Part shown: in pieces, positions 9,440 to 64,000 of the stretch
How positions within the stretch are numbered: the stretch's first letter is position 1
Layout: each line of letters starts with the position of its first letter
Origin: Mytilus californianus
Lineage: Eukaryota
Reading direction: 5' to 3'
DNA: 64,000 nucleotides
Assembly (NCBI RefSeq): GCF_021869535.1
Contig: NW_026262701.1
Location: 21,514,001-21,578,000, forward strand
The notes under the pieces: model-generated
The model's database searches: none
What the model saw: the letters and a program-made list of their open reading frames with translations, nothing else
Told to the model about the DNA's origin: nothing
Position numbers and translations under genes: made by a program

Positions 9440-10213
9440 ATGACCTGCATCTAAAAAAAAATTATCAATTATAATTAATGTTTATTTAATCTTAAAGAAA
9501 TTATGTTTCACCACTGTCTGAAAATTTTACCTTCAAATAAAAAATGATATTTGAAAAAGAAATGTAAATAAGAGTCTTAGTGTAAAAAAAAATCCAGAAG
9601 AATTCGTCATGTACCAGACAATATAATAAATTACAATTTATATATAAAGACTGATTGAAAACTAAAAGGACAAAACAATAGAAGAGCTAAAATATACTTA
9701 ACATTTTCAACAACCATTTTATTTGTACCTACATTTTCAGATTTCTATCGTCTGGTTTCATTCAAATTGTTAATAATGCACAATACTTATGCATTTTGAA
9801 TATATTGATGCAATAAAATTGAAAACTAAAGAATATGTGAAAAGTTGCTGAATTTGAGAAAGCATATTATCACGTTCTTCTTCTTTTTTTTCATCTTTTG
9901 TTGTTATAACTGCCCGGTTTGGTATGCCAAAAAGAGTTAATTCAATTGTTTGGCGTTTTTGTGAAAATCTCTGAACCTTTTCACAAAGAAAATGAATACT
10001 TAGATTTTTGCATGCAGTGTATGTCTTTATCAAAAAAATCCGACATACCATATTTGGCAACAATTACGTAGTATGTTTGACAATTGATAAGAATGTTTAA
10101 AGAATACAATATGGTGAACAAATTTTATCAATTAAAGTTTTACTTACCACTCTGCACGGAAATAATCCAATCAGGACTAAAGCCAGCATAACTGTAAGAC
10201 TGAATTTGTTCAT
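9440..10213 (-). pseudogene. mfp-3: Aberrant mfp-3 copy B (MNKFSLTVMLALVLIGLF-type signal)
   Basis: Exon 1 (10213-10148) is 66 nt instead of 67: TTT CC GTG CAG AGT G, a 1-nt deletion. The micro-exon 9450-9440 (ATGCAGGTCAT) is followed by ATAAGT instead of GTAAGT, so its donor is lost. TATATAAA at 10289-10282. No clear mfp-3 exon 3 follows. Confidence 0.8.
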
Positions 10214-27012: not shown

Positions 27013-30000
27013 TCAATAATATTTTCGTCCCCATCGACCTTTATTCCAGCCTTTATTCCATCCATAACCTCTGGGATATCCTTTGTATCCGTTATATTTA
27101 CCTCCGTATCGCCATGGATAATTATAGTTTGGGCCTTTATACTGAAATATAGAAAAACGATACAAGTGAAAATCAATTCTGATGTAGAAATATAAAGTAA
27201 GCAATTTTTTTTTTTGATTTCAATAAAACAAATACAGATATATGAACAAAGTTGTCAATGATTCAAGACTACTCTGGCTTACAGATATATGAACAAAGTT
27301 GCCAATGATTCAAGACTACTCTGGCTTACAGATATATGAACACAGTTGCCAATGATTCTGTTTACATGTATGACCTCTTTCTTGGTTCTTATTTTTTTTG
27401 CCTTTGACTTTCACAACACTTTGAAATTGAGAATGGAAATGGGGAATGTGTCAAAGAGATAACAAGCCGACCAAAAGGCAGAAAACAATGCAACCATGAT
27501 AAAAGATATTCCGAAACACATGTTTATATGACATGTTTACTTATTGATTGTTGGTGACCTTGTTGTAACTGTCAAAAAAAAAATTAAACACTAATAATTA
27601 TATTTTCCTCCAAGATTGGAACCGGCTCGGTGTTCTCATGATAGCGTGCTTGCCTTGATTTCTGAAGGGTGTGCTTTAGAATCCAGGCCGGGTCAAACCA
27701 AAGACTTGAAAAAACTGATCGGCTCGGAGTCAGAATAATGTGCCCGGGTAGTATGTCTTCCTATGAACTGTTACTACCGAACTAGCACGTGACCAATGCT
27801 ACTCAACGTGTCGTAGTACAAAGCAAGGTTTATATTTCATATCACATAATCATTATCTCGTCCTGAATATGCATTTTATTTTCCACTGAACGTTAAAGAT
27901 TCATTAGATATGTATCAATTTATCCTCCATGATTGGTTTTATTAGACAAAACATGGGTGACCTTACGTAAAAGATGACAGTTCAAAAACAGAAAAATCCA
28001 GATCCGGGAACTCGTTAAACACCTGTATGTAAACACGTGGATATAAGTAGAAGTTGTATTTTTAAATCATCAGGTTGTGTTAATGCCCAAAAAGTTTAAA
28101 GATAAAAATACCTTTTAAATAAATATCAGCCAAAAACAGAATAAACTACCGATATGCAATAGCTGTATTTTCTACCGTTGTTATAACGTCCTACTTTAAA
28201 ACAAGATTATTTATATACAATTAGTTACACATGACAATTGCATTGAAATGAGGTACATTGTGTAATAATGAAACCGGTTAATAAACAAGGATGTTTCGCT
28301 TTATAATATTGTGATATTATGTATGATCTTTTGTGATTTATTTTTGTAATGATGATCATTTAAATTAAACCTTGTATTTTGATATTTTGTAGGTGTTTTT
28401 TTCGCAAGATCTATCTATTGTGTGTTTATGCCAAGGTTTTCTTTGAATCATTATCAATCTCAATTATCATAGAAAATATATTTTATTATGTGGAACAACA
28501 ACACGCGCCAAATGTGCCTGTTATCTCTTGATTAAACATCAGATCAATATGTTACAAAAAGATATATAATTTTAATTTTGATTACTTTTATAGGTCATGA
28601 ATCTTAGAACATAATAAAGAGTCAATCAAAAGTTCTAGATTGAATAGAAATTGTAAATATGCTTGCAAAAAAAAAACGAGGTGGCAAATACGGAAGTGAC
28701 AACAAATAAACATTCATTTTTAAAACAAATAGACAAAAATCTCTGTACAATATGTCAAACCTTAAATCAAACGAATCTATAGTGCCTTACAAAATTGTGC
28801 GAGGTAGACGAATCCGGACTTAAAATGCTCTAATTAACTTTTTTAATGCAAAAATAGGCAGATCGGTTATATTTTGTCTTCATTTACGCATGGCTTTCAT
28901 TTGGATTAAATTGGAATGATCACAACTTAAGGAGACTGAAAAATGCTATATTCAGTTGAGACACACACACTTTTTTACTTGCGTAGACGTGCGTAAAATA
29001 TATTTTAATTTCTTTCTTCAAACTGATAACTTTTTCAAAGAAGAAAAACGCCTGATGTGTAAAGTTTCTCAAATTTCTGAATAATGCGCTATTTCAGTAT
29101 TGTAAAATTTCTCAGTGATACGAAATTGTGACGAAAAAGTAAGTAATGGCGAATCGAACTTTTTATACCTTGCGTCTCATTGATAAAAATAACATGAACT
29201 TGTCCAGTGTCCTGTTTAACGATTAATTAAATTACTGAACACGTGTGTGTAAAAAGAAATGCAAATGAACCTGTTTTCACATATACAGAATATAATTTTA
29301 TCTTACAGGCATTCAGATTAAGAACTTCCAACAAAGTTTAATTATGACTTATTCAGTATAAAGGTCTGGATGCATGGGGGTCTTTTGTCTGCATTCTAGA
29401 ATTTTTAGGCCATTTTTCTTAATTCTTTATTTATTTGGCCCATTATCCTCTAGTCTGTAAGATTGTACCCCTATTATCCTTTAGTCTGTAAGATTGTACC
29501 CCTATTATCCTTTAGTCTGTAAGATTGTACCCCTTTTATCCTTTAGTCTGTAAGATTGTACCCCTATTCAGACCCTAACGTTTATGAACATTTTTTTAAC
29601 GTATTTTTTTTATATAAAAATCAATGAGTGAATTTGTTCGACTTGAACTGTTAGGATAGAGAACAGAAATCTAAAAACAAATCATAACTATCATTGTTAA
29701 TCTACAAACAAGAGCAATTTTATAATTTCTTAAAGAATTTTTAACCTCCGAACTAAAGTTGCCATCCCTGTCTTCATAAACAATTATCTTTACGTAATTA
29801 AATTCATCGTACTGTAAAAAGATACGCACGATAATTTTTGTTACAGGTAAACAGGTACGATGAAGCAATAATAACTTCACCAAATCGAATTTCGCAAGAT
29901 TCAACAACAATGACCAGTCCATATTAGAATAAGGGGTAAACTATGTTGGGGTATTTAGAAATGATAGATTTTTAATAAAATTTTTGGTAAATATTACAAA

Positions 30001-32193
30001 ACACTCATCTTCCAAACTTTGTGTTTCAATTTTAAAAACATATATATTATTTATTGGTATAGTTTTTCAATCTGTCATTAGCGTTTGTAAGCAAAAGAAA
30101 GTTTGGGCTTTAAAATTCATCAAAATTATTTAAAACTTTATACAGAAAATTCACCTTCTCAAAGTATTAATTTATTAACACCTAATACACGGATACATAG
30201 CATAATCATTTCTTAGGATACTGAACAAAAAAAAGTGTTTATTCAGTGTCATTGCCACAAAGTGCGTTAAAGAAAACTATTATATAGCAAACAACTAATT
30301 GCTTCACAAAATCTTATCACACACTATAGAAAGTAGTGAATAAATCACAAAGAAGGGTAAAAAAATGCATTACAACTGTTACACCAGATTCCAACAAAAA
30401 GAATGTTTAAATAAAGCAATCTACCGCTGGAGATGATGAATTGGGACAGCCATGTAAATATATAATAAGATTGCTAAGTAATTAAAGACCCAAACCCAAC
30501 GATTTGTTTTGAAACAAGGTGGATATAGATTTTTTAGACTAAGTATGAAGTATTAATGTGTAGTACGCATGGAAAAATTGAGACATCAATCTAACAAGCC
30601 ATAAGGACAACTGATGTGAACAACGTAAGGTCACCGTACGGCCTACACATAATTTCCCTCGAAACACATTCATATTTTCAGATCTTTAAAAATATTAAGA
30701 CATTGGTTATGAAATCAATGTACGATAGATAAAACTGATATAATATATTTATGTAATTTCTTGTAGTTGCTAAAGTTTCATGTATACAATAGCTCTCATC
30801 TCTGTGTTCCATGTCTATATTGTTAATTTTAGCCAGAATTGTATGCTGTGTAAAAGATCCATAACATTGCTTGTAATTGTTATGTGAGATAAAAACCTAC
30901 AGGTATTTTTAAACTTACAGCACCTGCATCTGAAAAAAAGCAAAAATAAATAAAATCACATTAGTCGTAAAATCTATTTGTTAATAATGTCTGAAACTTT
31001 ATTTGCGAATGAAAAACAAAAATGACTATATGAGTGTATTGTAAGTAAATCTAGTATGTGAATTCGTCATTTACCATGAAAAAGAGAGGCGAAAGTTACC
31101 AAAGGGACATTCAAACTCATAAGTCGAAAATAAATTGACAACGCCATGGCTAAAAAAGGAAAAGATCAGCAGACAAACAATAGTACACAAAACACAACAA
31201 AGAAAACTATAGAAAACTATAGGTTGCACTTTGTAAATACAGCTGTTTCTCAAACCACGCCTCTTTTGGGGAGATATTTAATATTCATAGGTATGTTAAT
31301 TTGTTAACGTACTGGTTCCCATTGATGATCTCTGTGTTTCATCTCATAGAGAAATCACTTGGGAATGTAACCAGTATAGAAGAACATGGTAGCGGCTAAA
31401 TTTTAATTCTTAGGAGGTCCAAAAATGGAGGTAAGGGTAGTATAGAATTTTAGTATAAGTTTAAACTCTTAGAAGTTCAGGGCATATAAATGTTGAAAAT
31501 ATGCCGCACAGCCCTATATTTTGACCTTTGAATAAAATAGTAGTGCATATAAACTTTCCGTTCTGGGATATTATTTTTCACAGTTTTAGCCGCATAGGGA
31601 GTTCCTATGGGAAATTGCATTGTCTGTATTTACAGAATTGCAACCTATAGACTGAGCAACACGAACCCCACCAAAACCTGGGGGTGATCTCCATAATATA
31701 TAGATATCTTTTAACAACCATTTCTATTGTTACTAAGTTTTCAGATTTATTTTGTCCTGTTTCAAACAATGCCTTCGCATTTCAAATGTACGGATGTTAT
31801 GATGAATAAAAACCTGATGAAAAGAAAGTAATAAAAAGTGACATGTTTAATGTGCGCAAGCTCACTATTACATTGTTTTTTTTTCTATTACATGTGTTAT
31901 TAAAATAACAAGACTAAAACTATTTTTTTTCAGATATTTTACACTTCGGCTATTTTGAATATGATGCAACTGTTTCATATAGACTGTTATCATACATTTT
32001 TGCAGTTACTAAAATTTAAAAGAAATCCAGAATAAATTTCAACAATTTGTTTGACATTTATTAAAAAAAACCCTTGGAAGAATGAAATATTTTTAACAAT
32101 TCTTTTTATGACAAACTTTTACTCACCACTTTGCACGGCAAATGATCCTAGAAGGACCAAAGCCACCAAAACTGCAATACTGAGATTTTTCAT
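27013..32193 (-). CDS. mfp-3: Mussel foot protein-3, copy C (3 exons, 68-aa precursor)
   Basis: Exons 32193-32127, 30929-30919 (ATGCAGGTGCT) and 27141-27013 give MKNLSIAVLVALVLLGSFAVQSDAGAYKGPNYNYPWRYGGKYNGYKGYPRGYGWNKGWNKGRWGRKYY*. GT-AG sites intact; TATATAAA at 32280-32273; AATAAA at 26837-26832. Track ORF 27013..27204 contains exon 3. Confidence 0.95.
27233..27357. repeat. 47-nt tandem repeat x2.7
   Basis: TACAGATATATGAACAAAGTTG(T/C)CAATGATTCAAGACTACTCTGGCT at 27233 and 27280, partial at 27327. Confidence 0.92.
27615..27900 (+). mobile_element. Decayed tRNA-derived SINE in mfp-3 C intron 2
   Basis: GGTGTTCTCATGATAGCGTGC (A-box-like) ... GGGTCAAACCAAAGAC ... GGCTCGGAGTCAGAATAATGTGCCCG resembles my recollection of bivalve tRNA-SINEs. 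Confidence 0.6.
29442..29565. repeat. 31-nt minisatellite x4
   Basis: ATTATCCTTTAGTCTGTAAGATTGTACCCCT at 29442, 29473, 29504 and 29535. Confidence 0.95.
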
Positions 32194-34223: not shown

Positions 34224-37200
34224 ATGAAGAGTCTCAGCATAGTAGTTTTGGTGGCTTTAGTCCTTATTGGATCATTCGCTGTGCAAAGTGGTAAGTAAAA
34301 TTTGTCTTAGAAATATTGTTTATTATCGCTGTTTTGTGCATTTTTCCTTTGATCTTTTTCATATCATGCTACTCGCTTGCAATGGAAAATTATCGCAAGA
34401 AATTAAGGGTCACTTTGTCAATGTAAACATCAACAACGTCATAGGCAGAATAGCAATGAACAGATTACCAATGGTCTTTAAAGCTCGAGAATGTTTCTCG
34501 GCAACATCTCATCTCAGGGCTGTTGCCCTTTGATGAGATTGTAGCTGAAAAACACCCTCTCGTTTGAAAAAAAAACAACCATAATCCATAATTTTATTTT
34601 TTCATTCATTGCAGTTTTTTATCAAATGTCAAACAGACTAAGCATCTGTTGATATCTATTCTATGTCGGATTTTAAAAACATTTTGGTAATTGCAAATAA
34701 AAAAGTAGTCTCATATTGATAATATCGGCCAAAGAGTATACAATTTTAAACGAATTATTTTTTGTCTTTTTATCTTACTAAAACTGAACAAAATAAATAG
34801 TGTGCTTGCGCAAATTAAACATGCAAATTTTCTTTACTCTCTTATTTTACAATTTTAAGTATCTTTATTCATCATTGTATTCGTACAAATAAAATGCAAA
34901 CTAGGTAAATGTGCATTATTGACCATTTGATCAAAATATGACAAAATAAATGTGAAAACGTATCTAGATAAAATGATAATTGAAAGATATCTGTATATTG
35001 CAGGTTTGTTCCCAAATTAAAATATTCATTCAGTCCCAGTCATGAGGCTCTGTCATTTTATAGTCTTTTATCTCTTTTTAATTTTAGTTCATTTATATTT
35101 TTTCCGGAGTTTAGTGTGACGTCCATTTCCGATGAACTAGTATACATTATTGTTTAGGGGTCATTTGAATCCCGCCTCCGGACGCTGTATTTTTTTCGCT
35201 GTGTGGAAGAACTTTTGATGTACTAGGGCTGTTTTCTGCTGTTTGGTCGAGTTGTTGTCCCTTTGACACATTCCTTGTTTTCATTCTGAATTTATTCCAT
35301 ATTTAAATTTGTACTATTCATCATTCCTGGTAAATAACGAACTCATATTATTAGATTGGCTTACACTGCACTCATAAAGTCATGTCGTTTTAAGATATTA
35401 TTTTTGTTTTGCAATTTGAGACTAGACAACAAATAAATTTCAAGGCTAATTGAACATTATTAATGATTGATATTTTTTTTTTCAGATGCAGGTGGTGTAA
35501 GTTTAAAAAACCTTTAGTGTTTTATGTGACCTAGCAATAACAAACAATATAATGTATCGAAGAGGTATCCTTTACACAGTATACAATATTTGGTTAAATG
35601 AACAATATAGACATGGAACATAGAGATGAGAACCTTTGCTAAATGAAATATAGCATCTACAAGTAATAACATAAGTGGATAGACCACTTTCGAGTTCGTT
35701 GCATTTCCGTCAAAAACTTTGGTTTTAGTGAACATCATTCTTGCGTTTAGGTGCATCATCACTTCCTTCCAATGTTGAGCGAGCGGTTGACAAAAATATG
35801 ATGCTATATCACACGAATTATTTGGCAAATTAAATTCCTATAATTGATAATCACCACTGCTGTCATTAGGGAATTGTGATTAAGTACCTACGGAACAAAC
35901 ATTATTTCTAGTTTATCCTGCATAATGATGATCATGAAGACTCTTGGTGATCTTTAATAGTACAGGGATACAGGAGGGCCCCTCTATCTTTTAAATGACC
36001 TCATAAAGGCTTGCATAATTGACGAACTTTTCCGGTGAAGGACATAACACGGAAGTGGTCTATTGTATCAGTTTTATCTATCTTCCATTGATTCAATAAG
36101 AAATGTCTTAATGTTTTTAAATATCTGAAAATATAAGTGTTTCGAAGGAAATTATTTTCTTTTTACAGGCCGTACTGTGACATTACGTTGTTCACATCAA
36201 TTGTCCTAATGTCTTTTTTGATCAATGTGTCAATGGTTGCAAGCGTACTACTTGATAATAATTTATATGGAGTTTTAAAAATCAATATCCGACGCATTTA
36301 AACAATCCTTGGGTGATTGGTACTAAATAACCCTGCTATATGTTTACTTGTATGTCCATTTTAATGATCTCTAGCGGTAGATAGCTTTATGTTAATATTG
36401 TTGTGGGAATCTGGTGTCACAATCAAACTTGGACGTTCTTTTGAGATTTATTTGCTGTGGCCTTTAGTTTGTAATAAGATTTTGTGAGGAAATTTGATGG
36501 TATTCCTTAAACGCACTTTTTGCCAATAACACTTACTATGCGAAATGAAATTTTGTGTAGTATTTCAAGAAATGATTTTGTTATGTATCCCTGTATTTTG
36601 TGTAAATCAGTTAACGCTTTAAGGAGGCAAACTTTCTGTATAAAGTCAAAATGTTGTTGAATTTTGAAGCCCAGACTTCTTATTGCTTTAAATATACAAA
36701 GGGAAGATCGCAAAAAATATGCCAATACAGAAATATAGTTTTGTTAACTTCAGACAAAAAGTATGGGTGATGAGTGTGTTGTAGTATTTACAATAAGTGT
36801 TATGAAACCTGACATTTTCTCCCTACCAAATTTACCTCCAACACTTAATTTGATATGGACTAGTCAGTGTTGTTGAATCTTACGAAATTCGATTGAATGA
36901 AGTTACTATTGCTTCATCTCACCTGTTTTCCTGTTCAAATTTGTCTTGCGTATTTTTTGTCAGAACGGACATTTTATTGCGTAACGACTATGGTTTATAA
37001 GGACAGTGAGGTCAACTTTAGTTCTGAAGTTGAAAATTCTTTCATAAATAATAAAATAGCTTTGGTTTCTGGATTAAGAATTTTAATTATGAATTGTCTT
37101 TAGTTTTCTGTTCTCTATTCTAAAGGTTCATGTCGAACAAATTTACTCATTGATTATTTTTAAAAATATGATAAAAAACCATTTTCATCAGGGTCTGAAT

Positions 37201-39407
37201 AGGTTTATAGACTCGTAAATGATGGGAAGCAAAATCAAGAATAGAGAAAAATGGCCTATGATTAAGATACAGAAATGAATATCTGCATTCAGTCCCTCAC
37301 ACTTGATAAGTCATCATTTAACTTTTTTGAAAGTTCCAAATCTGAATGCCTATTGTTATATTCTGTTCATCTGAAAACAGGTTCAATTTCATTTCTTTTT
37401 ACAAACAATTGTTCTGTAATATAATTGACAATCGAACTATACATAGGACGAGTTCGTGCTATTTCTGTCAGTGAACATAGAGATACATTTAAAGCTTGTG
37501 TGTCTTAAAACAAACATCATTTTTCAGTCTTATAAAGTTGTTATCTTTCTAATTTTATCCAAATGAAAGCACAAAACCGATCTTTTTTGCATATAAAAAG
37601 TCATTTTTGATCACTTTAAGGGCGGATTCATCAACCATAAATAATATTGTTAGACCCTATAGATTCGTTTGATTTAATGTTTGATATATTGAATATAGAT
37701 ATTTGTCAATCGTTGAAGACAAATATTTTGACCACTAAATGTGTCATTGGCTGCTGTATGTACACTCATGTATTGGCCACATTGTGCGTGCATATTTACA
37801 ATTAACTTTTAATTTTAAACTTTTGATTGACTCTTTCATATACTCAAAGATTCATGGTCGATACAGGTATTCGAAATTGAAATTGGATATCCCTTTGTAA
37901 CATATTGATCTGATTTAATCAAAAGATAACAGGAACATTTGGTTTCACCTTTGCAGATTATACAATGATCTGATTGTTTATGAATCAAAGAAAGTCTTGC
38001 CATATACACACAATAGATGGATATCATAAGCTTTGCGAAAAACAACATCATTTCAAAAACAATCACAACAGATCATAGAAAAATATTGTAAAGCGACACA
38101 TCTTTCTTTATTCACCAGTTTCAGTATTGAACAACGTTCTTCATTTAAACCCAATTGTCAGGTGTTTCTAAATTTCATAGCAATATTCATATATCACAAC
38201 TGGAAGTAAGAAGAATGGTAAAAGCACAACTATTGCATATCGGTTGTTCATTCTGTTTGTGGCTGATATTTAGTCAGGATTTTTTTCTCTACACTTTTGG
38301 GGCATTCATACAACGTGATAGTTTAAAAATGCAACTTCCACTTATATCCACATGTTTACATACAGGCGTTTGACGAGTTTGCGATTCTGGAATTTGCAAT
38401 TTTTGTACTGTCATTATATTGTGTCTATTGCACAAAATCTTTGAGGATGTATTGATGGAGGGATAGATGGATGTTTAATGGCATATCAAATACATAATCA
38501 GGATGAGAACATGATTATATGATATAAAAATTAAACCCTACTTTGTACTAAACCAACACGATGAGCCGGAATTTTGACATGATAGTTCACAAGATAACAG
38601 TCAAACTGACGACATGTAAACCAACCGGACACATAATTCTGACTACGAACCGACTACTCTTAGCGTGCTAATCAGTGAAGCAGCAAATAGCAATTTTTAA
38701 GGCTTTGATTTAAACCTACCTGAGTTCAACCAAGGATCTCCCACACTCGAGACAAAAACACTACCATGAGACCACCAGGTTTTTAAAGAATCGTTCATAT
38801 CTACTGTTTTAACTCCAGTTTTTGGTGGGGATCGTGATGCATAGTCTTTAGTTTTCTATGTTGTGTTTTGTGTACTATTGTTTGTTTGTTTGTCTTTTTC
38901 CTTTTTAACCATGGCGTTTTCAGTTTATTTTCGATTTATGAGTTTGAGTGTCCCTCTGATATCTTTCTCCTATCTTGTCTAATGTTTTGTTCTCCTTGTT
39001 GTTCTTGACAGCTGCAGCAAGGTCAAAAACAATCAAATACAGTAAACATGTCATATAGGCATGTGTTTCCGGAATATCTTAATGTTGTGGAAAAAGCAAA
39101 ACAATTGAAAACCAACAAAAAACCCAGAAAAATGGGTACAAACAGAATAGCCAAAGTAATCTTGAATCATCGGCAAGTTTGTTCATACATCTTTATTTGA
39201 CTATTGATATTACGTTAAGTTTGAAATTCTTTTTATTTCTTCATCAGAATTGATCCTAACTTTTATCGTTTTTCGATATTTCAGAATTATTATCCAAAAT
39301 ATAATTATCCAAGGGGATACAAAGGTAGATATAACGGGTATCCCAGAGGAAATTATGGTTGGAATAAAGGCTGGAAGAAAGGTCGATGGGGACGAAAATA
39401 TTATTGA
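34224..39407 (+). CDS. mfp-3: Mussel foot protein-3, copy D (3 exons, 66-aa precursor)
   Basis: Exons 34224-34290, 35486-35496 (ATGCAGGTGGT) and 39285-39407 give MKSLSIVVLVALVLIGSFAVQSDAGGNYYPKYNYPRGYKGRYNGYPRGNYGWNKGWKKGRWGRKYY*. GT-AG sites intact; TATATAAA at 34137-34144; AATAAA at 39578-39583. Confidence 0.95.
38540..38780 (-). mobile_element. Decayed tRNA-derived SINE in mfp-3 D intron 2
   Basis: Reverse complement of the same SINE family (CGGACACATAATTCTGACTACGAACC; GCAGCAAATAGCAATTTTTAAGGCTTTGATTT) at the position corresponding to the C copy. Confidence 0.6.
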
Positions 39408-46949: not shown

Positions 46950-47850
46950 AGAAATCATTAAATTGCATACACCACCTCTTGATCGGAAACTTATTAACAG
47001 TAATTGAGACTGTGAATTCATATTCGGACAGTATATTCCAGTGGGAGGTAGCTTTTTTCCGTGCAAGTTGTTGAAAGCTTGTAATATGTTCTCTTTGACG
47101 GTCAAAAAAATTATGAGGGCGTCTGTAAAGTTTCTAAAGACAAAACTTGACCCATTAGAACGCTTGGTTCAATAGTTTCCTAGTAAGCAGCAACACATTA
47201 TCAAGGAAATCAGGGTTAGAAACGTAATATCTGCAAGATCATATACACTTGGAGATATATACTACATATAAAGGCGCTACTGGAATGTTGATACATAAAA
47301 ATGAAAGTTAACAATAAGAAAGCTTAACTCATCTCTTTTGTCGTAATGTTTAGTTTTAACCTATCCTCATTGTCAATTGCTTAATGTAGGTTACGATATG
47401 ATGTAGGTTACGATATGATGTAGGTTATGATATGAGGCCGATTTATATATAACAGTGGACTACTTTATATCAATTTCGATGGGATAGATCCGTTCAACAA
47501 AGTCATCAAATTAATAAGCTACAGATTGCAAGAAAGAGTACCAAGACTACAAAGAGAAGCGTCATACTTGCTATTAATATGAACAGTACCTGTATTGCAC
47601 CGATTTTTATGCACAGATGGTAACTAAAATCAAAAGTTACACAAATTCAAGCGGATTATCATTTAAAACATGTAAGTGTTGCTTGACTCTGCATGGTTTT
47701 ATGGTATAAATATTATAACATAATGTTTACATCATTATTATATTGTTATTTATATTTAAAAATCATGTACTTCCATTTTTTGATTATTCTACAATTAAAT
47801 TGTTCACAACACTTGCTGACATGGTCTTTTTCTTATTGCCTATCATCTTT
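46950..47850 (-). pseudogene. mfp-5-like promoter, exon 1 and intron 1 relic
   Basis: 47565-47506 reads MTLLFVVLVLFLAICSLLI* (frameshifted, donor lost). The flanks share blocks with mfp-5 63100-63750, e.g. ACAGATGGTAA, GGATTAT.AT.TAAAACATG and GTTGAAA.C.TG.AATATGTTCT. Confidence 0.65.
47384..47434. repeat. 17-nt tandem repeat x3
   Basis: ATGTAGGTTA(C/T)GATATG three times. Confidence 0.92.
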
Positions 47851-48659: not shown

Positions 48660-49367
48660 AAATTGAAAGCAAGGTATGATAGGAACTGGTCCAAACTATG
48701 ATGAAATGATAAACTTTGTGTCAGTTAATTTCCGAAATTGCTAAACGTTTGGGGAAAAAAAATAAACACAACAAAACAATAACATTTTGACAGACTTTGT
48801 ATCATGTTGTCACTTTGATATTGCCCTGAATGGATATATTTTAATCAATATGGGAAAGATCAATGAAAACGTACAAATAGATATAATATTGTAAAAGGCC
48901 ATGGTTTCAACAAATTCGTTTTTCCACTTACCAAATTCTGTAAAAAAACATCTAAGATATGCTGATTTTAAATATCTGAACGGGTAAGGTAGCAAAGTGT
49001 GGCTTTGCAATTATATTGCCTTTGTTTAAAATACAACATTTGTGTTGTCACTTATTACAACACCAATATAATGATTTTCCTTTCTTTTAATGAATCATAA
49101 AGATAAAATATTCCAGATTTTTGGTAGTTTTAAATTTTATTTTCATTCTTGCATCTAAAATGACAAGAATTACGGATTATGTAATATATTTACATTTTTA
49201 ATCTCAATAGGAACATGTGTTTCATTGTTTTTTCATCTTGATTTGCAGTGGGTTGATTGCGAAATGTATATAAAGCGCAGACAATATTCAGCCATAATAG
49301 AAGTATTTCTCAGTAATTGGTTTATTCCTTCTAACAGTTTGATTTAGAAGCAACGAATAAATTCATT
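48660..49367 (+). pseudogene. mfp-3 remnant F: B-type promoter and dead start codon
   Basis: Inverted homolog of about 10200-10900. TATATAAA at 49267-49274. TTTAGAAGCA ACG AAT AAA TTC A (ACG at 49353-49355) corresponds to B TTTAGAAGCA ATG AAC AAA TTC A. The sequence is then cut by repeat DNA from about 49370. Confidence 0.75.
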
Positions 49368-55921: not shown

Positions 55922-57135
55922 ATGAATAATCTCAGTATCGTAGTTTTGGTGGCTTTGGTCCTTATCGGATCATTTGCTGTGCAAAGTGGTAAGTAAACGT
56001 TTGTCTTAGAAATATTGTTTATTATGATTTTCCATCCTTTAAAGTTTTTTTTATTAATTTCCAAACAGACTAAGCGTCTGCTGATATATATTCTATGTCG
56101 GATTTTAAAAATGTTTAGTAATTGCAAAAGTCTTTGATAGCAGTCTATATGAAAAAGTAGCGTCATATATTAGATTTGCTTACCCTACTCTCATATAGTC
56201 ATGTCTTTTTAAGATATTATTTTTGAGTTTCAAATAAAGGACGAGACAACCAATTTATTTCAAGACTAATGTGATATTACTTGTAATTGATATGTTTTTT
56301 CAGATGCAGGTGGTGTAAGTTAAAAAATGCCTGTAGTGTTTTAAGTGATATAACAATAACAAACAGTATAATCAATTGAAGAGGTATTCTTTACACAAAA
56401 TACAATATTGGCTAAATTGAACAATATAGAGATGGTACACAGAGATGAGAACCTTTGTTTACACGAAAGTATAGCCACTTCAAGTAATCACATAAATGAA
56501 TTGTATCAGTTGGATCAATCTTCCATTGATTCAATAAGAAATGTCTGAATGTTTTTAAATATCTGAAAATATAAGTGTATTTCGAAGGAAGTTATTTTCT
56601 TGTTCAGGTCGTATTGTGACATTACGTTGTTCACATCAATTGTTCTTAGGTCTTATCTGATCAATGTCTCAATTGTTGCAAGCGTACCACTTGATAATAT
56701 GTTATATGGATTCTAGAAAAATCAATGTCCACTGCCTTTTTAATATAATAGTTTGGTAATGGGGGCTGAATAAACCTGATAAATGTTTATATGTCTGTCC
56801 TAATTCATGATCTCCAGCGGTTGATAGCCTTATCTAAATATTGTTATTGGAGTCTGGTGTTACGGTACATTTTTTGACGTTCCTTTGAAATTTATTTCCT
56901 ACTGTCTTTAGTGTGTGATAAGATTTTGTGAGGGTATTTGAAGTTTGTTAATCATGGTTTTCTTAAATAGATACAAGAAGATGTGGTATGAGTGCCAATG
57001 AGACAACTCTCTATCCTAGTTTGTAATTTTTAAAAGTAATCAGTTTTTCCCTACCTAATTTATCTCTAATATTTATTTTGATATGGACTGGTCATTGTTA
57101 TTGAAACTTGCGGAATTCGTTTAGGTGAAGTTATT
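55922..57135 (+). pseudogene. mfp-3: mfp-3 copy E: intact exon 1 and micro-exon, no exon 3 in the window
   Basis: Exon 1 at 55922-55988 (MNNLSIVVLVALVLIGSFAVQS), micro-exon at 56304-56314 (ATGCAGGTGGT), intact GT donors, TATA at 55835-55844. Intron-2 similarity to C and D runs to about 57135, where it meets the mfp-5 stop codon. I found no TGGAATAAAGG-type exon 3 on the + strand downstream. Confidence 0.8.
57072..57077 (-). terminator. Candidate mfp-5 polyadenylation signal
   Basis: AATAAA on the minus strand, 60 nt after the mfp-5 stop codon. Confidence 0.55.
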
Positions 57136-57137
57136 TA

Positions 57138-60100
57138 CTAACTGCTACCGCCTCCATAATATTTCTTGTAATCTTTTCTGTGGTATTTTCTAGCTTTCTT
57201 AAGATATTTGTACTTTCCAGTGCGCTTATATTTGTAATAGTATTTCCTTCCTTTTCCGTAATACTTTCCCTTGTATCCATGCCCGTGATATCCGTGCCAA
57301 TGACTTCCAGATGGATAGTACGCATTGCCTGGGTAAAAGGCGCCACTGTAATCCTGTCGAAAATAAATCCTGCTATTACACTGTACCGAATGAATATTTC
57401 AATATAACGCAGATTTGAATGGTAATTCAATTCTAAAGAAAATTTTTATAAATTGATTTAACGATATAAAGGGAAATATTTCTTTTTGTTGCGTCTGACG
57501 TCACAAATGGTGTATAAGCAGACTAAGCAATGACAGGTTTGCTTTGGTAATAACAAGCCTTCTTTGATAAGGCATTATTTATATTGTTTGATTTGATTTC
57601 TCAATTTGTCGCCTGTAATAACCATACATTTTTTAATGTACGTCCTTCTCTTTGACTGCTGTTATTCCACTCATCAATAGAGAGAAAAAAGTTATATACT
57701 TTAACACTGTATAATCCTGCTAGAAATTAATGTGCCTACCCCCAAGCAAGGAACCTCGTCATTGGTTCATATCTATTTTCTTTTCTTTCATTAAGGACGT
57801 ATGCGGTTCAATAAGAGTCTTTTTTATTTCTGTTTGTTTGCTAATTGTGTTGTTATGGTGCCGTTTACATATAACTGACTTCATCATCGAATATCATGCA
57901 CTACGTGAGTAAATTTAATAGCAAGTATTCGGTGGTTCATGGTGCATATACCCCGTAAACAAAAGCGGTGATTTGAATGTTAATTATTGTTTAAATAACA
58001 CTCAAGTATATTACATCTTTCGCTTGACGGCTCAGGAGATATAAAAACTTACTGAGAATATGAGCCAATATCCCCTGTGAAGATCCCGAATTACATATAA
58101 TGTCTAAAATAAACCCGTTGTCTACACATTCTTTTACACAATTATATATGCATACAGTACGCGATATCCGGTAGAATGCAATATCTATTGTTCTATTCAG
58201 ATTGATTTATTTATATGCTTGTTAATATATTGAAATGTCAATTTGTCCAGACATTTTTTACACAATCATATCCATGTGATATTATTGCATTCTAGTTTCA
58301 TATTTTGAATATATATTATTGTCATACCTTTTAATTTGCGAATAATGCAAGTAGGTGAGTATCGCAATAATAAGAACTCGCATTCCGAAATCTGACACAT
58401 ATATTTGTATGCAGTTTTTCTTGTTTTTGCAATAATTATTCTCACATATTGGTCTGTCATGTCGAAATAGCATTAATAAATGCACGCAATAATTTCTGAA
58501 TTTACAGTATATGATTAAAATACTGAAAACATATCCATTCAAATGGATACTTTAACATTATTTCTAAGACAGACATATCCATTCAAATGGATACTTTAAC
58601 ATTATTTCTAAGAAAGAATAAACTGATAAAAAAGGCTGTGACGAATGCGATAAAGGGTAAATTTGTAAACTATATTAGAGAAATCAATTTATTATGACCA
58701 AATTAGCGGATGAGCGCGGCTCTCTGGAAGGGTAAACTGACTCCGTTCTATCCGTATCTTAACATATATTCAGAATAAATTAATGATTAAAATTAGTGAT
58801 AGGACGTCAAAACAAAAGCCGACTGGTAGATGGTTGTCTTAGCTATTATATGTCCAACACTAAAGGGTCGTCCTGTCAATATAATGGAATTTGATGAGAC
58901 TGTCATACAAGTGAGAGGGTAGCTAGCTGTAAAACCAGGTTCAATCCACCATTTTGTACATAAGAAAATGCCTGTACCAAGTCAGGAATATGACAGTTGT
59001 TATCCATTTGTTTCATGTGTTTGAGCTTTTGATTTTGCCATTTGATTAGGGACTTTCCTTTTTGAGTTTTCCTCGGAGTTCAGTATTTTTGTGATTTTAC
59101 CTGTTAGTTGGAAAGGATTTATAGATCCACAGCATCGTACGCACGTTTTAATTCAGCTTAATAGAAAAAAAAAACTAACCAGTTCATGGTTTATTGATCT
59201 GTAAGTTTTTTTCATATTTGGATTTAAAGTTTTCAAAAGTTTTTACACACATTTAAAAAAACATATATAAATGAAAAACGAATCTGGAGGTTAAAAATTA
59301 TCTGTTTTTATCCGGAAATTAGTTAACTATATGCAATATTTGATTCGGGCCATTCGTAATTGGATTTTTGTTTAACCATTATATATCTCTCAGATACTTA
59401 GAATACTTCCTATCTAATATAAATTGCCAAGATACATTTTGGAAAGTAACCGGAATCATGCATCGTAATTTACTTGCTACGAGCAAAACAACAGGATCCG
59501 GTGGTTGAATAGCAACTGCCAAATTTTCTCAAGCGCCTGTCTTCATCATGGTTTTTGTACTTTTTTGTATGAGCATAATATTCAGAAACTTATGTTTCAA
59601 CACACTCAGGCAAAGATGACCTTAGACGATGCGAACTAGACGTATCACCTATTTTAAAGAGTGATGCATGCATACCTTTACTGGAATAGTGCATATGTCT
59701 ATTTAAACGAACAACCCCTTTGAAACAATATCTTTGATTACAAGAAACATAAGATGCAGGCTCATTTAAACGTACAAGCTGCATTTTAATAATAGACAAA
59801 AACAAACGCAATTTATTTTAGCAAAAACCTTTTACGTGTCAGGAAATGTATCTCTGTCGGTTGTAATGTGTGCGCCTGTGTTTGAAGTACCTGTTTGATG
59901 ATTTTTTTTTTAAAATCCACATTTAAACAAAGTCTTTTTAGTATGACTTCAATCATGCTATTGATATTTCTTTATCTAATACGATTTAATTATTAAGCTT
60001 TAGATTATTTCATAAATGGAGAATATAGTAAGCAAAACTACAGTTAACTTAAAATATTTTGTGACATACAGGTCTTTCGTTTATTTACATAAATTTTCTA

Positions 60101-63100
60101 GTTCATAAGCGGCGTTGCTGCCTTTACTTTATATACGATAACATGCCTTTCGTGATTTTTTCATTGCTTGATTTGAATAGTATGTTGTTTCTATAATGAT
60201 TATCCAATAGTTTGGCTAAATTTTTTTCTTTGATAAAATTTTGTCCGGAATCGTTGGAAATATAGTGAATTATTTCAAAAGTCAAAACTACGTACTTTCG
60301 TGTGCTGCTGCCATTTTCTGCAAACATGTTTTTGTGAGCACAATCTTGACTGTATGAATTATTCTATTATATAATAAAATAATCATAAAATATACTTACA
60401 TCATATCCTGAGCCTACATCTACAATATACATTAAGCATTTCAAAAATCATTCGGCAATTTCCATACATGTATACGAGTTAATAATTTAATCAGTATCTT
60501 AACTTTGTAAGAAGACTGTGTATACATTTACTGATACAAAAGTCAATTGTAAACAATCTGTATGGTCTGATAAGGAGAAAGTGACATAACTATTCATCCA
60601 TTTTCAAAGATTAATACAACGGAATATAAATTCCTATATTTTCATTGTTATCATTTCTATTTTTCAATTCGGCTTTTGATGGAAAAGAATTTGAACAACA
60701 AGTGTTTTCCATCAGTTACTGCAGTGCAATAGCCTTTCAAAGTTGATGTAAAAGAATCAGCAACAGCAACTTTATGAATTACATTTTTTTTAAATAAAAT
60801 CTGATTTAAATACATCCGTTATAAGTTCTCTTCTAATGATAATGACTCGAAGGTGTGTATCATTAAATAAAAGTATAACCCGAAAAGGTCCTCGAAACAG
60901 TATGAAAACAAAGCCGTGTCAAAACCTTGTACACATGTCATGTATTTCTATCAGGAAGCTTTAAAAGACAGTTATATTAACAATATCTATTTGCTCATGA
61001 TTAATACGATTGAGATATACCAGCATTTTTTGACATTATAGACGTAAAAACAAACAGACACACATGGGAGTAGAAATAATCTTATCCTGCAATTAGCACT
61101 TTTCCAGTGATTCAGTGCGTTGATAGGGTGTTATCCTTTGCTGGTAAAATCATCAAAGAAATCAGGCTTATAAATTGCAATGCCTGATGGGCAATTTGTC
61201 TCTTAAGACTCATCAGTGGCACACAAATCAATACAATTTTATCTTCCCAATTGTGAACTTTCCATTTCTATGTATCAAAATGTCAGCAGCGATTGCAGAT
61301 GGAGTATATATCTCCAAGTTGAAACGATATTCCAGAGCTGGTATTTCCTATCATGAATTTCTTTATAGATGTTGCTGCTTACGAAAGAGCTATTAAACCA
61401 CAGGTTCCAAGTGGTAACGTTCAAATCATTCTTTCGAACATTTAAGGATTCCATCACGATTTGGTTGGCCATTATAGAAAATCTGTTTCAAAGATAACAT
61501 TGGATATGTTCCGATTAAGGTACTACAATTCCGTCCTCTTTTCCTCGAATGTGATCTACCGAATAAGACTTACTTACATGACCAACATGACGTGTGTCAC
61601 ATTTGGAACAGGATCGGTATGCACTTCCGGATCACCTGATATCAACCTTAGGTTTTTACGGGGTTTTTTATGCGCAGTCTTCAGTTTTTTATGTTGTGTT
61701 TTGTGGACTTTTGATGGTTTTTTGGTGGTCTTTCGTTTTTAACGATGGGGTAGACAGTTTGTTTTCAATTTATAAGTTTTACTACTTTCAATATCTCTTT
61801 GGTATCTTCCGCCTTTCTTTGAAGGCAAAATCAAATACAAAATTAAAGTTCATACAAATGTATCACTCATTATATGATTCACTACATATTTGATATGCAT
61901 ACAAATGTATCATTCATTATATGATTCACTACATATTTGATATGCAAAAAATATAGACGATTTGTACCTTATATTATTTCATTATTAAGTGTGTGTTATT
62001 AATTTCTTTATAATTATGTTGGTTTAAAATTGGTTAATTATTATGAATTTTAGTCATCATTACTGTCTTTTCAATATAAAAACTAACATTTGCACCGACA
62101 TCTGCCTTTCATACATCCAAAGAAGTTTGTTTCTCGATAAAAAAAAATTAAAATAATGGAAAATTTCCGCTTAAATATTTTATTTTTATTCTTGTTGTTG
62201 GAAATTGGGAAATATCGAGTCACAAACACATTACACACAAAATATAATTCAAAGGTCAAAATGAGTATTGGATTTGATTTAAAAAAAAAATGATAATTTC
62301 CATTTGCTTTTAATCCGATAAGAAAAAAAATTTTCATCTTAATGTAGGCAAAAAATAACTTATATGTAAGTAATATATAAATCAAAGTATAAAGAATTGT
62401 AGATGATTTGAAATAACAGTCGCGTCTAGTCTAACGATTTAGAAACTGAACACGGAATTATGGCGTGACCAAATAGTTTTTTGCCTCCACCTCCATAGTT
62501 GGTTTGCATGTATTTGTCCCCTATAGTGACATGTAAAATGAGACAAATCACTGTCACAGTTCAGAATATTTTAGTCAGATGAAGCGATATAATACTCTTA
62601 TGATATAAAAGATGAAAAGTTATAGTCGATTTTTTATGTGTTGTACAAAATCTAAGGTTTTATTCGCCAAATCAAAATTGATGACAACGGTTTTTACTGT
62701 TGTATTTCTTAACCCTGTTTGTTTCGATCATCTAACATCTCACTTTTCTTTTATATTTAACAAAATATTTGGTCCAGGAATATTTGATTAAGTCAATTCG
62801 AAAACTATCTGGTCTGCTCATTAAAATAAACCTCGTGCGTTAATACCTAACATATGACATATTACGGTCACCATCATATTTCATTGTTTCATAGTAAGTG
62901 TGTCACAAATGATAGTTCACATATTTCTCTCAATGTCTAAAGTTGTGTTACGGATGTGACCGTTATCGAATGTAACGTTTTATCGGTTTTTTAAAGAACA
63001 ACAATTATTCCGACCTCAAATTTACCGAAAAAGAACTTTCACTTTTTTTCTTATCAAGGAAATATGTGTAAGATAAATATTCAGAGAGTCATTAGGTATT

Positions 63101-63413
63101 CCAAGGGGTAGTAACTGTCCCTTTGCACTGGTCGTTCGGAATATGGCTGAAATATTTCAACTGGACGTTGAAAACCTGAAATATGTTCTAATGAACAAAT
63201 ATATTAACAAGATTGCATTTACATTTTTTGATAATAGCATTGCTGTTGCTGATTAAGAAAACAAAAATCTAAATTGGTTATCATCGAAGATAGTTTTTCA
63301 TTTATGTCCATTATACATCATATGATAAAACAGTGTTATGGAAATATAGAATTACCGATACAAGCTGCTAAAGTTAAAAGAAAGAGCACCAAGACTACAC
63401 AACTAAGCTTCAT
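57138..63413 (-). CDS. mfp-5: Mussel foot protein-5 (3 exons, 97-aa precursor)
   Basis: Exons 63413-63356 (58 nt), 60419-60400 (20 nt, ATGTAGGCTCAGGATATGAT) and 57353-57138 (216 nt), with GT-AG introns, give MKLSCVVLVLFLLTLAACIDVGSGYDDYSGAFYPGNAYYPSGSHWHGYHGHGYKGKYYGKGRKYYYKYKRTGKYKYLKKARKYHRKDYKKYYGGGSS*. The C-terminal YKYLKKARKYHRK.YKKYYGGGSS is the mfp-5 signature. AATAAA at 57077-57072. Confidence 0.96.
58529..58613. repeat. 44-nt-period direct duplication containing a small palindrome
   Basis: ACATATCCATTCAAATGGATACTTTAACATTATTTCTAAGA at 58529 and 58573. It contains TATCCAT-TCAA-ATGGATA. Confidence 0.9.
58880..59101 (+). repeat. Abundant interspersed repeat (unclassified)
   Basis: AATGCCTGTACCAAGTCAGGAATATGACAGTTGTT...GAGTTCAGTATTTTTGTGATTTTAC. 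Partial copies at about 1200-1330(-), 8745-8885(+), 39785-40030(-), 46495-46715(+) and 49370-49430(+). Confidence 0.8.
61215..61820 (+). mobile_element. Penelope-like 3' fragment in mfp-5 intron 1
   Basis: ORF 61175..61396 reads FPIVNFPFLC...GVYISKLKRYSRA, followed by a decayed copy of the shared 3' tail. Confidence 0.8.
61851..61946. repeat. 47-nt direct duplication
   Basis: CATACAAATGTATCA(C/T)TCATTATATGATTCACTACATATTTGATATG twice. Confidence 0.9.
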
Positions 63414-64000
63414 GTTGGCTAAAACTATGAGCTTTAATTGAATTGTTCTGTTGTTATATTGCATTATGAAACAGATGGTAATTGCACGCAAAAATTAACA
63501 ACAGGATTATAATGTAAAACATGCACAATGCATGAAAGTGCTCGTTTGACTTTTCATCGTAAGACGATGTTTTACAACATAAATATAGAGACGTAGGTTT
63601 ACAACATGATTATATTGTTACTTTTATTTAAAGAAAAAACATCTTAAGTTGTTTCCGTTGTTTGATTGTATTTCTACAAGGTGATCGTTCACAACTCACG
63701 CTAGAATGGTTTCATTTCACAGCCAATAATGCAATGTTAAATATGTTATGAACTTGAATTAAACTACTTCATTAATAGATATGCAATGTTAAAGTATTAA
63801 TCCCAGTTTCAAGCAAGAAGAATTATATTTGCAACTGTATTGCTCTCGTATACTTATAATTACTTTCTCTACTATTACAGTCAATTCCATTTTCTCGTCG
63901 TTATACAAAGGCTTGATACATTTTAGAAAGGAAAACACTTCACCACTAAAAAATTTGATATCAAAACTTTTCATATTTCGAGGAACAGATATGAATAGAA

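What the first reader, a model, noticed from the sequence alone, without database searches (positions are those of the whole stretch)
57138..63413. mfp-5 and mfp-3 share a three-exon, micro-exon layout and sit in one cluster
Seen: both genes have a signal exon ending in phase 1 on the G of an Asp codon (67 nt in mfp-3, 58 nt in mfp-5). Both then have a micro-exon starting AT G(C/T)A GG (ATGCAGGTGAT versus ATGTAGGCTCAGGATATGAT) and ending in phase 0, and one last exon carrying almost all the Tyr-rich mature peptide. Established: these are the two Dopa-rich interfacial plaque proteins, usually treated as separate families with little alignable sequence. Inference: they descend from one ancestral secretory cassette, and the last exon is the interchangeable module.
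Basis: partly seen in the sequence, partly recalled or inferred. Interest (0 to 1): 0.78.

Follow-up and report, generated by a model that had tools for sequence, protein, structure and literature searches.

The report
Mussel glue genes share micro-exon layout
In the California mussel, the genes for the two main surface-bonding glue proteins, mfp-3 and mfp-5, lie interleaved in one 300-kb cluster and share the same build (signal exon, tiny exon carrying the signal-cleavage site, one body exon), which hints at a common origin but does not prove it.

Summary
The window is Mytilus californianus C121:21,514,001-21,578,000. It holds one mfp-5 gene (exons of 58, 20 and 216 nt, minus strand) and mfp-3 copies A, A', C and D (exons of 67 and 11 nt plus a body exon), along with defective copies. 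cDNA-derived proteins, a RefSeq model, one RNA contig, a second mfp-5 paralog and M. galloprovincialis mfp-3 loci all support the junctions.

The phase-1 signal exon ending in G is generic: myticin and defensin genes of the same genome have it too. The micro-exon is the only specific shared trait. It starts Asp-(Ala/Val)-Gly and covers the predicted signal-peptidase site. No sequence homology between the two families was detectable in signal exons, promoters, intron flanks or body exons.

No chimeric gene shows last-exon swapping. The candidates are a truncated mfp-3 copy and mfp-5 5' relics cut by a repeat. However, the Lys/Tyr half of the mfp-5 body is clearly homologous (E 1e-11) to the C-terminus of a His-rich gene on another chromosome, so the mfp-5 body may be a mosaic.

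My best reading is ancient whole-gene paralogy, with moderate confidence. This is a new variant of a known kind and of moderate interest. Other notes of this scan had already recorded the mfp-3 micro-exon.

The parts
63356..63413 (-). mfp-5 (copy 5a) exon 1: start codon plus 19 signal-peptide codons plus G, 58 nt, phase 1, donor GTAATT
   Evidence: RefSeq model P0001 and the mefp-5 cDNA protein P0002. The published Mcfp5 numbering K2, C5, C18 puts the start at MKLSC, so the 17-residue N-terminal extension in RefSeq is probably an annotation artefact.
60400..60419 (-). mfp-5 micro-exon, 20 nt, (G)AT GTA GGC TCA GGA TAT GAT = D V G S G Y D, enters in phase 1 and leaves in phase 0; it covers the predicted signal-peptidase site
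   Evidence: Identical in paralog 5b. SignalP 1-25 for Mcfp5 in PMC7018726.
57138..57353 (-). mfp-5 last exon, 71 codons plus TAG: Tyr/Gly/His-rich N-terminal half and Lys/Tyr-rich C-terminal half
   Evidence: 71% identical to Mefp-5 Q8WTE8. The C-terminal half is 72% identical to the C88 gene.
5444..5510 (-). mfp-3 copy A exon 1 (67 nt, phase 1, ends in G); identical copy A' at 14285-14351
4916..4926 (-). mfp-3 copy A micro-exon ATGCAGGTGAT (D A G D); identical copy A' at 13757-13767
3681..3821 (-). mfp-3 copy A last exon (46 codons plus stop); identical copy A' at 12522-12662
   Evidence: PF04202 51.1 bits.
27013..32193 (-). mfp-3 copy C: exon 1 at 32127-32193, micro-exon at 30919-30929 (ATGCAGGTGCT, DAGA), last exon at 27013-27141
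   Evidence: Micro-exon and last exon equal the cDNA-derived Mcfp-3 variant 2 P0005.
34224..39407 (+). mfp-3 copy D: exon 1 at 34224-34290, micro-exon at 35486-35496 (ATGCAGGTGGT), last exon at 39285-39407
55922..56314 (+). mfp-3 copy E: exon 1 at 55922-55988 and micro-exon at 56304-56314, both intact. No last exon was found. Its intron-2 homology to copies C and D ends at about 57135, against the mfp-5 stop codon.
9440..10212 (-). mfp-3 copy B (and B' 8840 nt further on): 66-nt signal exon, micro-exon ATGCAGGTCAT with an AT in place of the GT donor, and no body exon found. Probably dead.
47530..47760 (-). relic of an mfp-5-type promoter plus signal exon (65% identical to 63378-63632)
49081..49365 (+). 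relic of an mfp-3 upstream region, head-to-head with the mfp-5-type relic
   Evidence: nhmmer E 2e-57

Best explanation
mfp-3 and mfp-5 are two families of small secretory genes interleaved in one cluster of about 300 kb that grew by tandem segmental duplication.

Both families are built the same way. Exon 1 carries the 5' UTR and the n- and h-regions of the signal peptide and ends in phase 1. A micro-exon (11 nt in mfp-3, 20 nt in mfp-5) starts Asp-(Ala/Val)-Gly, carries the end of the signal peptide with the signal-peptidase site and the first residues of the mature protein, and ends in phase 0. One last exon carries the rest of the Tyr-rich body and the stop codon.

The most likely history is descent of both families from one ancestral three-exon gene by whole-gene tandem duplication. 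The families then diverged so far that only the architecture and the first codons of the micro-exon are still recognisable. The mfp-5 body either kept or acquired a Lys/Tyr module that it shares with a His-rich gene on another chromosome.

Shown: the exon structure, the junctions, the cluster and the module shared with C88. Inferred: the common ancestry and the role of the micro-exon as carrier of the cleavage site.
For: Same phases and exon order in mfp-5a, mfp-5b and 13 mfp-3 loci of both subfamilies.

The mfp-3 micro-exon is conserved between M. californianus and M. galloprovincialis.

The two micro-exons agree at 6 of their first 8 nt and both encode D-(A/V)-G. My estimate for chance is roughly 0.004 for the 8-mer alone.

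A micro-exon after the signal exon is absent from myticin, two defensin-type families and macin.

The motif is at chance level genome-wide, apart from 12 hits in this cluster.

All PF04202 hits and both mfp-5 genes lie within C121:21.487-21.787 Mb, and mfp-5-type 5' relics sit between mfp-3 copies.

Predicted signal-peptidase sites (Mcfp3 1-24, Mcfp5 1-25) fall in residues coded by the micro-exon (PMC7018726).

There is a weak, not significant, collinear resemblance between the start of the mfp-5b body and the slow-type mfp-3 bodies (p 0.02-0.04, uncorrected).
Against: No detectable homology was found between the two families:
- Signal peptides score p 0.05-0.18 against shuffles and against signal-like open frames.
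- nhmmer profiles of the mfp-3 exon 1 and exon 2 flanks find every mfp-3 copy (E below 1e-50) but not mfp-5, even at E 100.
- The conserved promoters share no 8-mers.
- hhalign probability is 7.6%.
- PF04202 does not hit mfp-5.
- BLASTP of the body exons gives E 0.38.

The case therefore rests on architecture, three or four codons and map position. The control set for micro-exon frequency is only four families.
Confidence: 0.55

Rival explanations
1. One secretory 5' cassette (signal exon plus micro-exon) has been combined with different last exons by recombination in intron 2, so the bodies of mfp-3 and mfp-5 are unrelated modules.
For: Intron 2 is phase 0 in both families, so a swap would keep the frame. 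A rearrangement breakpoint does lie in intron 2 of mfp-3 copy E, right at the mfp-5a stop codon. The bodies have no significant similarity. The C-terminal half of the mfp-5 body is shared with a gene on contig C88 (E 1e-11), so modules have moved or been retained independently of the 5' part. Three weaker mfp-3-type signal-exon hits without any mfp-3 body hit lie 7-27 kb before the window. They could belong to another family, but I could not read them.
Against: If the cassette had been reused recently, the signal exons, introns and promoters should resemble each other, and they do not. No intact chimera was found: copy E has no body exon, and the mfp-5-type 5' ends in the 40-kb repeats are cut by an interspersed repeat with hundreds of genomic copies.
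Confidence: 0.15
2. Independent origin. The two families are unrelated, the like layout is coincidence or convergence, and they are neighbours because foot-gland genes are co-regulated or because the region is prone to duplication.
For: Phase-1 signal exons ending in G are generic. There is no sequence homology anywhere. D-(A/V)-G is only three residues and fits the small-residue rule for signal-peptidase sites.
Against: A micro-exon of 11-20 nt directly after the signal exon was seen in none of the four control families. The shared start motif is at chance level elsewhere in 1.65 Gb. The interleaving in the cluster includes head-to-head mfp-3 and mfp-5-type pairs.
Confidence: 0.25
3. The mfp-5 micro-exon is a gene-model artefact and the real transcript is spliced differently.
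For: My single read-laying run gave no read across the junctions of the window copy. Run X7 has no depth on the gene. The high depth in run X1 carries the alleles of paralog 5b.
Against: The published 96-aa Mcfp5 precursor has D20, S23, D26, Y28 and D30, exactly as exon 1, the micro-exon and exon 3 of 5b predict. The M. edulis cDNA protein has DVGS after the signal. The RefSeq model agrees. The splice sites are canonical and conserved in both paralogs.
Confidence: 0.03

Closest known systems
Phase-1 introns at signal-peptide cleavage sites of animal secreted proteins (Tordai and Patthy; Vibranovski et al.; summarised in PMC1626468)
   Same: The signal exon ends in phase 1 in a G|G-type context close to the cleavage site. 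This is seen here in mfp-3, mfp-5, myticin and defensin genes.
   Different: That rule predicts one intron. Here a second intron follows 11 or 20 nt later, which isolates the cleavage site on a micro-exon.
Mfp-3 family, Pfam PF04202, and the published Mcfp-3 cDNA variants
   Same: Copies A and C pass the Pfam cut-off. Copy C's micro-exon and last exon equal variant 2.
   Different: mfp-5 does not match this model. The genomic architecture with the micro-exon was not found in the papers searched.
Mefp-5 / Mcfp-5 (Q8WTE8; ABE01084)
   Same: The window gene is 71% identical to Mefp-5. Paralog 5b fits the published Mcfp5 residue numbering.
   Different: The window copy (5a) is a divergent paralog, 91% identical in nucleotides over the body exon. 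Its homology with 5b stops right after the stop codon, and its own expression was not shown.
Conotoxin-type three-exon peptide genes (signal / pro / mature), e.g. PMC3862624 (seen only as title and abstract; the rest is general knowledge)
   Same: Small secreted products, tandem families, one exon per functional part, fast-evolving mature exon.
   Different: In conotoxins the signal exon is the conserved part of a superfamily. Here the signal exons of mfp-3 and mfp-5 are not alignable, and the middle exon is a micro-exon, not a pro-region.
Tandem fp-3 and fp-5 gene arrays in Perna viridis (PMC7971044)
   Same: Foot-protein genes are multicopy through tandem duplication.
   Different: Pvfp-3 and Pvfp-5 lie on different scaffolds, and Pvfp-5 is an EGF-repeat protein. 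Exon layout is not discussed there.
Myticin genes of the same genome (PF10690)
   Same: 49-nt signal exon, phase 1, ending in G; clustered paralogs.
   Different: The next exon is large and carries the rest of the signal plus the mature peptide. There is no micro-exon.

Membership tests
Mfp-3 (Pfam PF04202) | Body exon matches the family model above its 22-bit cut-off | tested here: met
   Copy A scores 51.1 bits and copy C 24.7 bits. Copy D scores 12.2 bits, below the cut-off, but is 83% identical in nucleotides to C.
Mfp-3 (Pfam PF04202) | Signal peptide of the family (model positions 1-24) | tested here: met
   Signal-exon hits at copies A, A', C, D and E and in the extended cluster.
Mfp-3 (Pfam PF04202) | mfp-5 proteins match the Mfp-3 model | tested here: not met
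   No hit for P0001, P0002 or the mfp-5 body exon at E up to 1. hhalign probability 7.6%.
mfp-5 | Sequence similarity to a characterised mfp-5 | tested here: met
   71% identity over 99% of the query to Mefp-5 Q8WTE8, E 4.5e-13.
mfp-5 | Transcribed in the foot | tested here: inconclusive
   Run X1 has a depth of about 1e5 on the body exon against 25-85 in the introns. At 57172, 57198 and 57282 every contig carries the letter of paralog 5b. Contigs drop rare variants, so copy 5a is neither shown nor excluded.
One ancestral secretory cassette shared by mfp-3 and mfp-5 | Same exon order, intron phases and micro-exon | tested here: met
One ancestral secretory cassette shared by mfp-3 and mfp-5 | Recognisable sequence homology of signal exon, promoter or intron flanks | tested here: not met
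One ancestral secretory cassette shared by mfp-3 and mfp-5 | The layout is rare among unrelated secreted-peptide genes of the same genome | tested here: inconclusive
   A phase-1 signal exon is seen or inferred in 3 of 4 control families, so that part is not rare. A micro-exon is seen in 0 of 4. The motif is at chance level outside the cluster. The sample is too small for a rate.
Last exon as interchangeable module (exon shuffling) | Intact chimeric genes, or the same body behind different cassettes | tested here: not met
   Copy E is truncated. The mfp-5-type 5' ends in the 40-kb repeats are cut by an interspersed repeat.
Last exon as interchangeable module (exon shuffling) | A body module found in another gene context | tested here: met
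   mfp-5 body residues 28-66 against the C-terminus of the His/Gly/Arg-rich open frame on C88: 72% identity, ungapped, E 1e-11. The 5' exons of that gene could not be read.

The most novel reading that the evidence does not exclude
The micro-exon is a retained 'adaptor' that carries the signal-peptidase site of a single ancestral adhesive gene. Downstream of its phase-0 intron, different bodies were assembled as mosaics. The mfp-5 body would combine an mfp-3-like Tyr/Gly start with a His-rich stretch and a Lys/Tyr module shared with a His-rich plaque-type gene on another chromosome. Other small foot proteins, possibly the unread mfp-3-type signal exons just before the window, would use the same adaptor.
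Probability: 0.2. Interest if true: 0.7.

Novelty: new variant of a known kind. Interest (0 to 1): 0.45.

Why it matters
mfp-3 and mfp-5 are the Dopa-richest proteins at the plaque-surface interface and the templates for most mussel-inspired adhesives. Their evolutionary relation is open because their low-complexity sequences do not align. Gene architecture and map position are characters that survive when sequence does not. A shared micro-exon in one cluster makes the question 'one origin or two?' testable in other mytilid genomes. The shared Lys/Tyr module on another chromosome suggests that the adhesive motifs may have been passed between genes. The cluster map (functional copies, dead copies, and which mfp-5 paralog is the expressed one) is also of practical use for expression and knock-down studies.

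Tried and rejected
- Signal-peptide homology: the best alignment (MK-LS-VVLV) looked good by eye but scored p 0.13 against signal-like open frames of the region and 0.05-0.18 against shuffles.
- Body-exon homology: residue shuffles gave p 0.002-0.03 for mfp-5b against slow-type mfp-3. Dipeptide-preserving shuffles raised this to 0.02 or more, uncorrected for 12 tests, so I do not claim it.
- The 'MQYSYC..' open frames at about 40-kb spacing beyond the window looked like an mfp-5 signal exon fused to a new body. The downstream part is an interspersed repeat (875 first-look candidates genome-wide), so these are relics, not chimeras.
- Read laying: 6,000 letters cannot span the 6,276-nt gene, so I chose 55700-61699. 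Run X7 (RNA) has no depth on the gene. Runs X5 and X6 behave like DNA. Run X1 supports mfp-3 exon 1 to exon 2 splicing and very high mfp-5 expression, but of paralog 5b. Repeats flooded the joint tables.
- The word search with the C88 open frame returned nothing because its repeat words saturated the candidates. Pfam found nothing for it or for three long window ORFs.
- A search for an mfp-5-type signal exon elsewhere in the genome found only 5a and 5b.
The three mfp-3-type signal-exon hits before the window and the 5' end of the C88 gene stayed unread, and I did not walk to them by other tools.
- Papers: no paper in the held library describes the exon structure of mfp-3 or mfp-5.
- Joined spliced models were not sent to any search. 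Exons were searched one by one by reference, and full-length comparisons used database proteins only.
- Complex prediction, structure prediction and the big protein search were not used, because they do not bear on the question.
Full report
WHERE WE ARE. The window is Mytilus californianus, contig C121:21,514,001-21,578,000. The last exon of the reported gene is 100% identical to RefSeq protein LOC127702696 (P0001) and 71% identical to M. edulis Mefp-5, Q8WTE8 (P0002).

THE OBSERVATION.

The stated coordinates (57138-63413) hold only mfp-5, on the minus strand.
- Exon 1 is 63356-63413: 58 nt from the ATG, 19 codons plus G, donor GTAATT.
- Exon 2 is 60400-60419: 20 nt, acceptor TAG, donor GTAAGT.
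- Exon 3 is 57138-57353: 71 codons plus TAG.

mfp-3 lies elsewhere in the window, in several copies.
- A and its 99.9% identical tandem copy A' are on the minus strand.
- C is on the minus strand and D on the plus strand.
- E is on the plus strand and has exons 1 and 2 only.
- B and B' are defective.
- Each intact copy has a 67-nt signal exon ending in G, an 11-nt micro-exon ATGCAGGTNNT between a long T-run plus CAG and GTAAGT, and one Tyr-rich last exon that starts in phase 0.

ARE THE JUNCTIONS REAL?

For mfp-3:
- The cDNA-derived Mcfp-3 variant 2 (P0005) reads QS/DAGA/YKGP, which equals the translations of copy C's micro-exon and last exon.
- In run X1, a contig ends its match at 55988, the last base of a signal exon, and goes on with ATGCAGGT. 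X1 behaves like foot RNA, with depth about 1e5 on the mfp-5 body and 25-85 in its introns.
- Two M. galloprovincialis loci show the same 67-nt and 11-nt exons (ATGCAGCTGAT and ATGCAGCTGCT).

For mfp-5:
- The RefSeq model uses both junctions. It only starts at an upstream ATG.
- The M. edulis cDNA protein has DVGS right after the signal.
- A second gene, 5b, lies at C121:21,780,956-21,787,114. It is collinear with the window copy (5a) over 7.8 kb at 92.6% identity and has an identical micro-exon.
- PMC7018726 lists residues of the cDNA-derived 96-aa Mcfp5 precursor (K2, C5, C18, D20, S23, D26, Y28, D30, K53). These fit 19 + 1 + 6 + 70 residues from the three exons of 5b exactly.

I could not get reads across the junctions of 5a itself. 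The gene is 276 nt longer than the 6,000 letters allowed per read-laying run. In X1, every contig carries the 5b letter at 57172, 57198 and 57282. So 5b is the canonical, highly expressed Mcfp-5, and expression of 5a is open.

THE CLUSTER.
- All 21 PF04202 hits of the 1.65-Gb genome lie in C121:21.487-21.778 Mb.
- I read the 200 kb after the window. It consists of tandem units of about 40 kb at about 99% identity. These carry slow-type mfp-3 genes with micro-exons ATGCAGGTTAT or ACGCAGGTTAT.
- Three copies lost the micro-exon and are out of frame.
- There are five mfp-5-type promoter-plus-signal-exon relics. Each relic is cut after about 58 nt of the exon by an interspersed repeat with hundreds of genomic copies.
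- A further mfp-5-type relic (47530-47760) lies head-to-head with an mfp-3 upstream relic (49081-49365) inside the window.

The two families are truly interleaved.

WHAT IS GENERIC AND WHAT IS SPECIFIC.

Phase-1 introns near the cleavage site are the most common arrangement in animal genes with signal peptides (PMC1626468). I checked four unrelated secreted-peptide families in this genome.
- Myticin: 49-nt signal exon, phase 1, last base G. The next exon is large and starts inside the c-region.
- An MGD-type defensin: a phase-1 acceptor with a candidate 55-nt phase-1 signal exon upstream, then the mature exon.
- A second defensin-like group: the acceptor side fits phase 1; its signal exon was not located.
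- Macin: signal and domain in one exon.

So 'signal exon ending in phase 1 on a G' says nothing about kinship, and none of the four has a micro-exon. Genome-wide, AGATGYAGG-N(1-13)-GTAAGT has 61 matches against 58 for the reversed control. Twelve of the 61 are the mfp-3 (10) and mfp-5 (2) micro-exons of this cluster, and the rest are scattered singly. The micro-exon, with its D-(A/V)-G start, is therefore the one specific shared character.

PMC7018726 reports SignalP sites after residue 24 for most Mcfp3 variants and after residue 25 for Mcfp5. These fall inside the micro-exon-coded residues 23-26 and 20-26. That fits the mature N-termini I recall from the literature for Mefp-3 (AD..) and Mefp-5 (SSEE..).

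IS THERE SEQUENCE HOMOLOGY? No test found any.
- Signal peptides: p 0.13 against signal-like open frames and 0.05-0.18 against shuffles.
- nhmmer profiles of the mfp-3 exon 1 region (-300 to +200) and of the micro-exon plus or minus 150 nt recover every mfp-3 copy, fast and slow type, at E below 1e-50. They do not touch mfp-5 even at E 100.
- The family-conserved promoter 8-mers do not overlap.
- hhalign of database precursors gives 7.6% probability over 8 signal columns.
- PF04202 does not hit mfp-5.
- Body exons: BLASTP E 0.38. A collinear resemblance between the start of the 5b body and the slow-type mfp-3 bodies is not significant once dipeptides are preserved.

IS THE LAST EXON INTERCHANGEABLE?

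I found no intact chimera. Copy E is instructive but dead. Its intron-2 homology with C and D runs to about 57135 and then meets the mfp-5a stop codon on the other strand. The homology between 5a and 5b ends at the same point. So a rearrangement breakpoint lies in intron 2, and the 3' flank of 5a is antisense mfp-3 intron. Two other notes of this scan say the same.

One unexpected result does speak for modular bodies. Residues 28-66 of the mfp-5 body are 72% identical, ungapped, E 1e-11 with composition adjustment, to the C-terminus of a 346-codon His/Gly/Arg-rich repeat exon on contig C88. That exon also starts in phase 0. Its 5' exons lie outside what I could read. No mfp-5-type signal exon or micro-exon motif was found near it.

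VERDICT. The layout and the cluster are confirmed. I put common descent of the two gene scaffolds from one three-exon ancestor at about 0.55. The cassette-plus-swapped-exon version gets 0.15, independent origin 0.25 and artefact 0.03. The genes and their products are well known, and public gene models already contain these exons. What is new is the comparison, the cluster map and the shared C88 module. No paper in the held library describes any of this. Other notes of this scan had already recorded the mfp-3 micro-exon on neighbouring DNA.

PROCEDURE. Exons were searched singly by reference.

Noticed in passing
L003:1495-2532 (-) = G000:C88:113,916,240-113,917,277: A 346-codon open exon of His/Gly/Arg-rich repeats (HRHGRFG-like units). 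It starts in phase 0 after a CAG acceptor and ends in a Lys/Tyr module 72% identical to the C-terminal half of mfp-5 (E 1e-11). It has no Pfam hit, no word-search hit and no paper with the repeat motif.
   Followed up: partly
window 2418-11259 and 11259-20099: An 8,842-nt direct tandem duplication at 99.92% identity that carries mfp-3 copies A+B and A'+B'. It is either very recent or an assembly duplication of two haplotypes.
   Followed up: no
window 56315-57137: The 3' flank of mfp-5a, where its UTR and an AATAAA must lie, is the antisense strand of mfp-3 intron 2 (homologous to introns of copies C and D). Homology with paralog 5b stops within about 30 nt after the stop codon. The 3' flank of 5b matches nothing in the 264 kb read.
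   Followed up: partly
window 57172, 57198, 57282: In the RNA-like run X1, all contigs over the mfp-5 body (depth about 1e5) carry the letters of paralog 5b. The expressed Mcfp-5 of the literature is therefore 5b, and the window copy may be weakly expressed or silent.
   Followed up: partly
window 63414-63464 (-): The RefSeq model starts 17 codons upstream of MKLSC, at an ATG that overlaps the TATA-like AATATAA. cDNA-based numbering (K2, C5) puts the start at MKLSC.
   Followed up: partly
L010:3300-3638, L014, L018 (window-frame 97300-97638, 137758-138096, 178710-179047): Three slow-type mfp-3 copies have only 157 nt between the signal exon and the body exon. They have no micro-exon, and the phases do not fit (1 into 0). 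They are probably dead copies multiplied with the 40-kb unit.
   Followed up: partly
L009, L013, L017, L021, L024 (e.g. L013:1941-2048): Five relics of an mfp-5-type promoter plus signal exon (62-67% identical over 300-400 nt to 63363-63759). Each is interrupted near the exon end by an interspersed repeat, and they lie head-to-head with slow-type mfp-3 genes.
   Followed up: yes
G000:C121:21,486,789-21,506,912 (7-27 kb before the window): Three weaker mfp-3-type signal-exon hits (18.7-19.6 bits), about 10 kb apart on the minus strand, with no mfp-3 body hit nearby. They may belong to another small foot-protein family. The published Mcfp6 precursor has S22 followed, by my recollection of the mature sequence, by GGG. 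That would fit a 22-codon mfp-3-like signal exon ending in phase 1 on G.
   Followed up: no
window 9440-10212 and 18280-19052: mfp-3 B and B' have a signal exon one base short (66 nt) and ATAAGT in place of GTAAGT after the micro-exon. No body exon was found downstream.
   Followed up: no
window 61233-61783, 58874-59106, 56967-57048: Interspersed repeats inside the mfp-5 introns and 3' flank. They have many copies in the cluster in both orientations and very high depth in all runs, and they flooded the joint and loose-end tables of the read laying.
   Followed up: no
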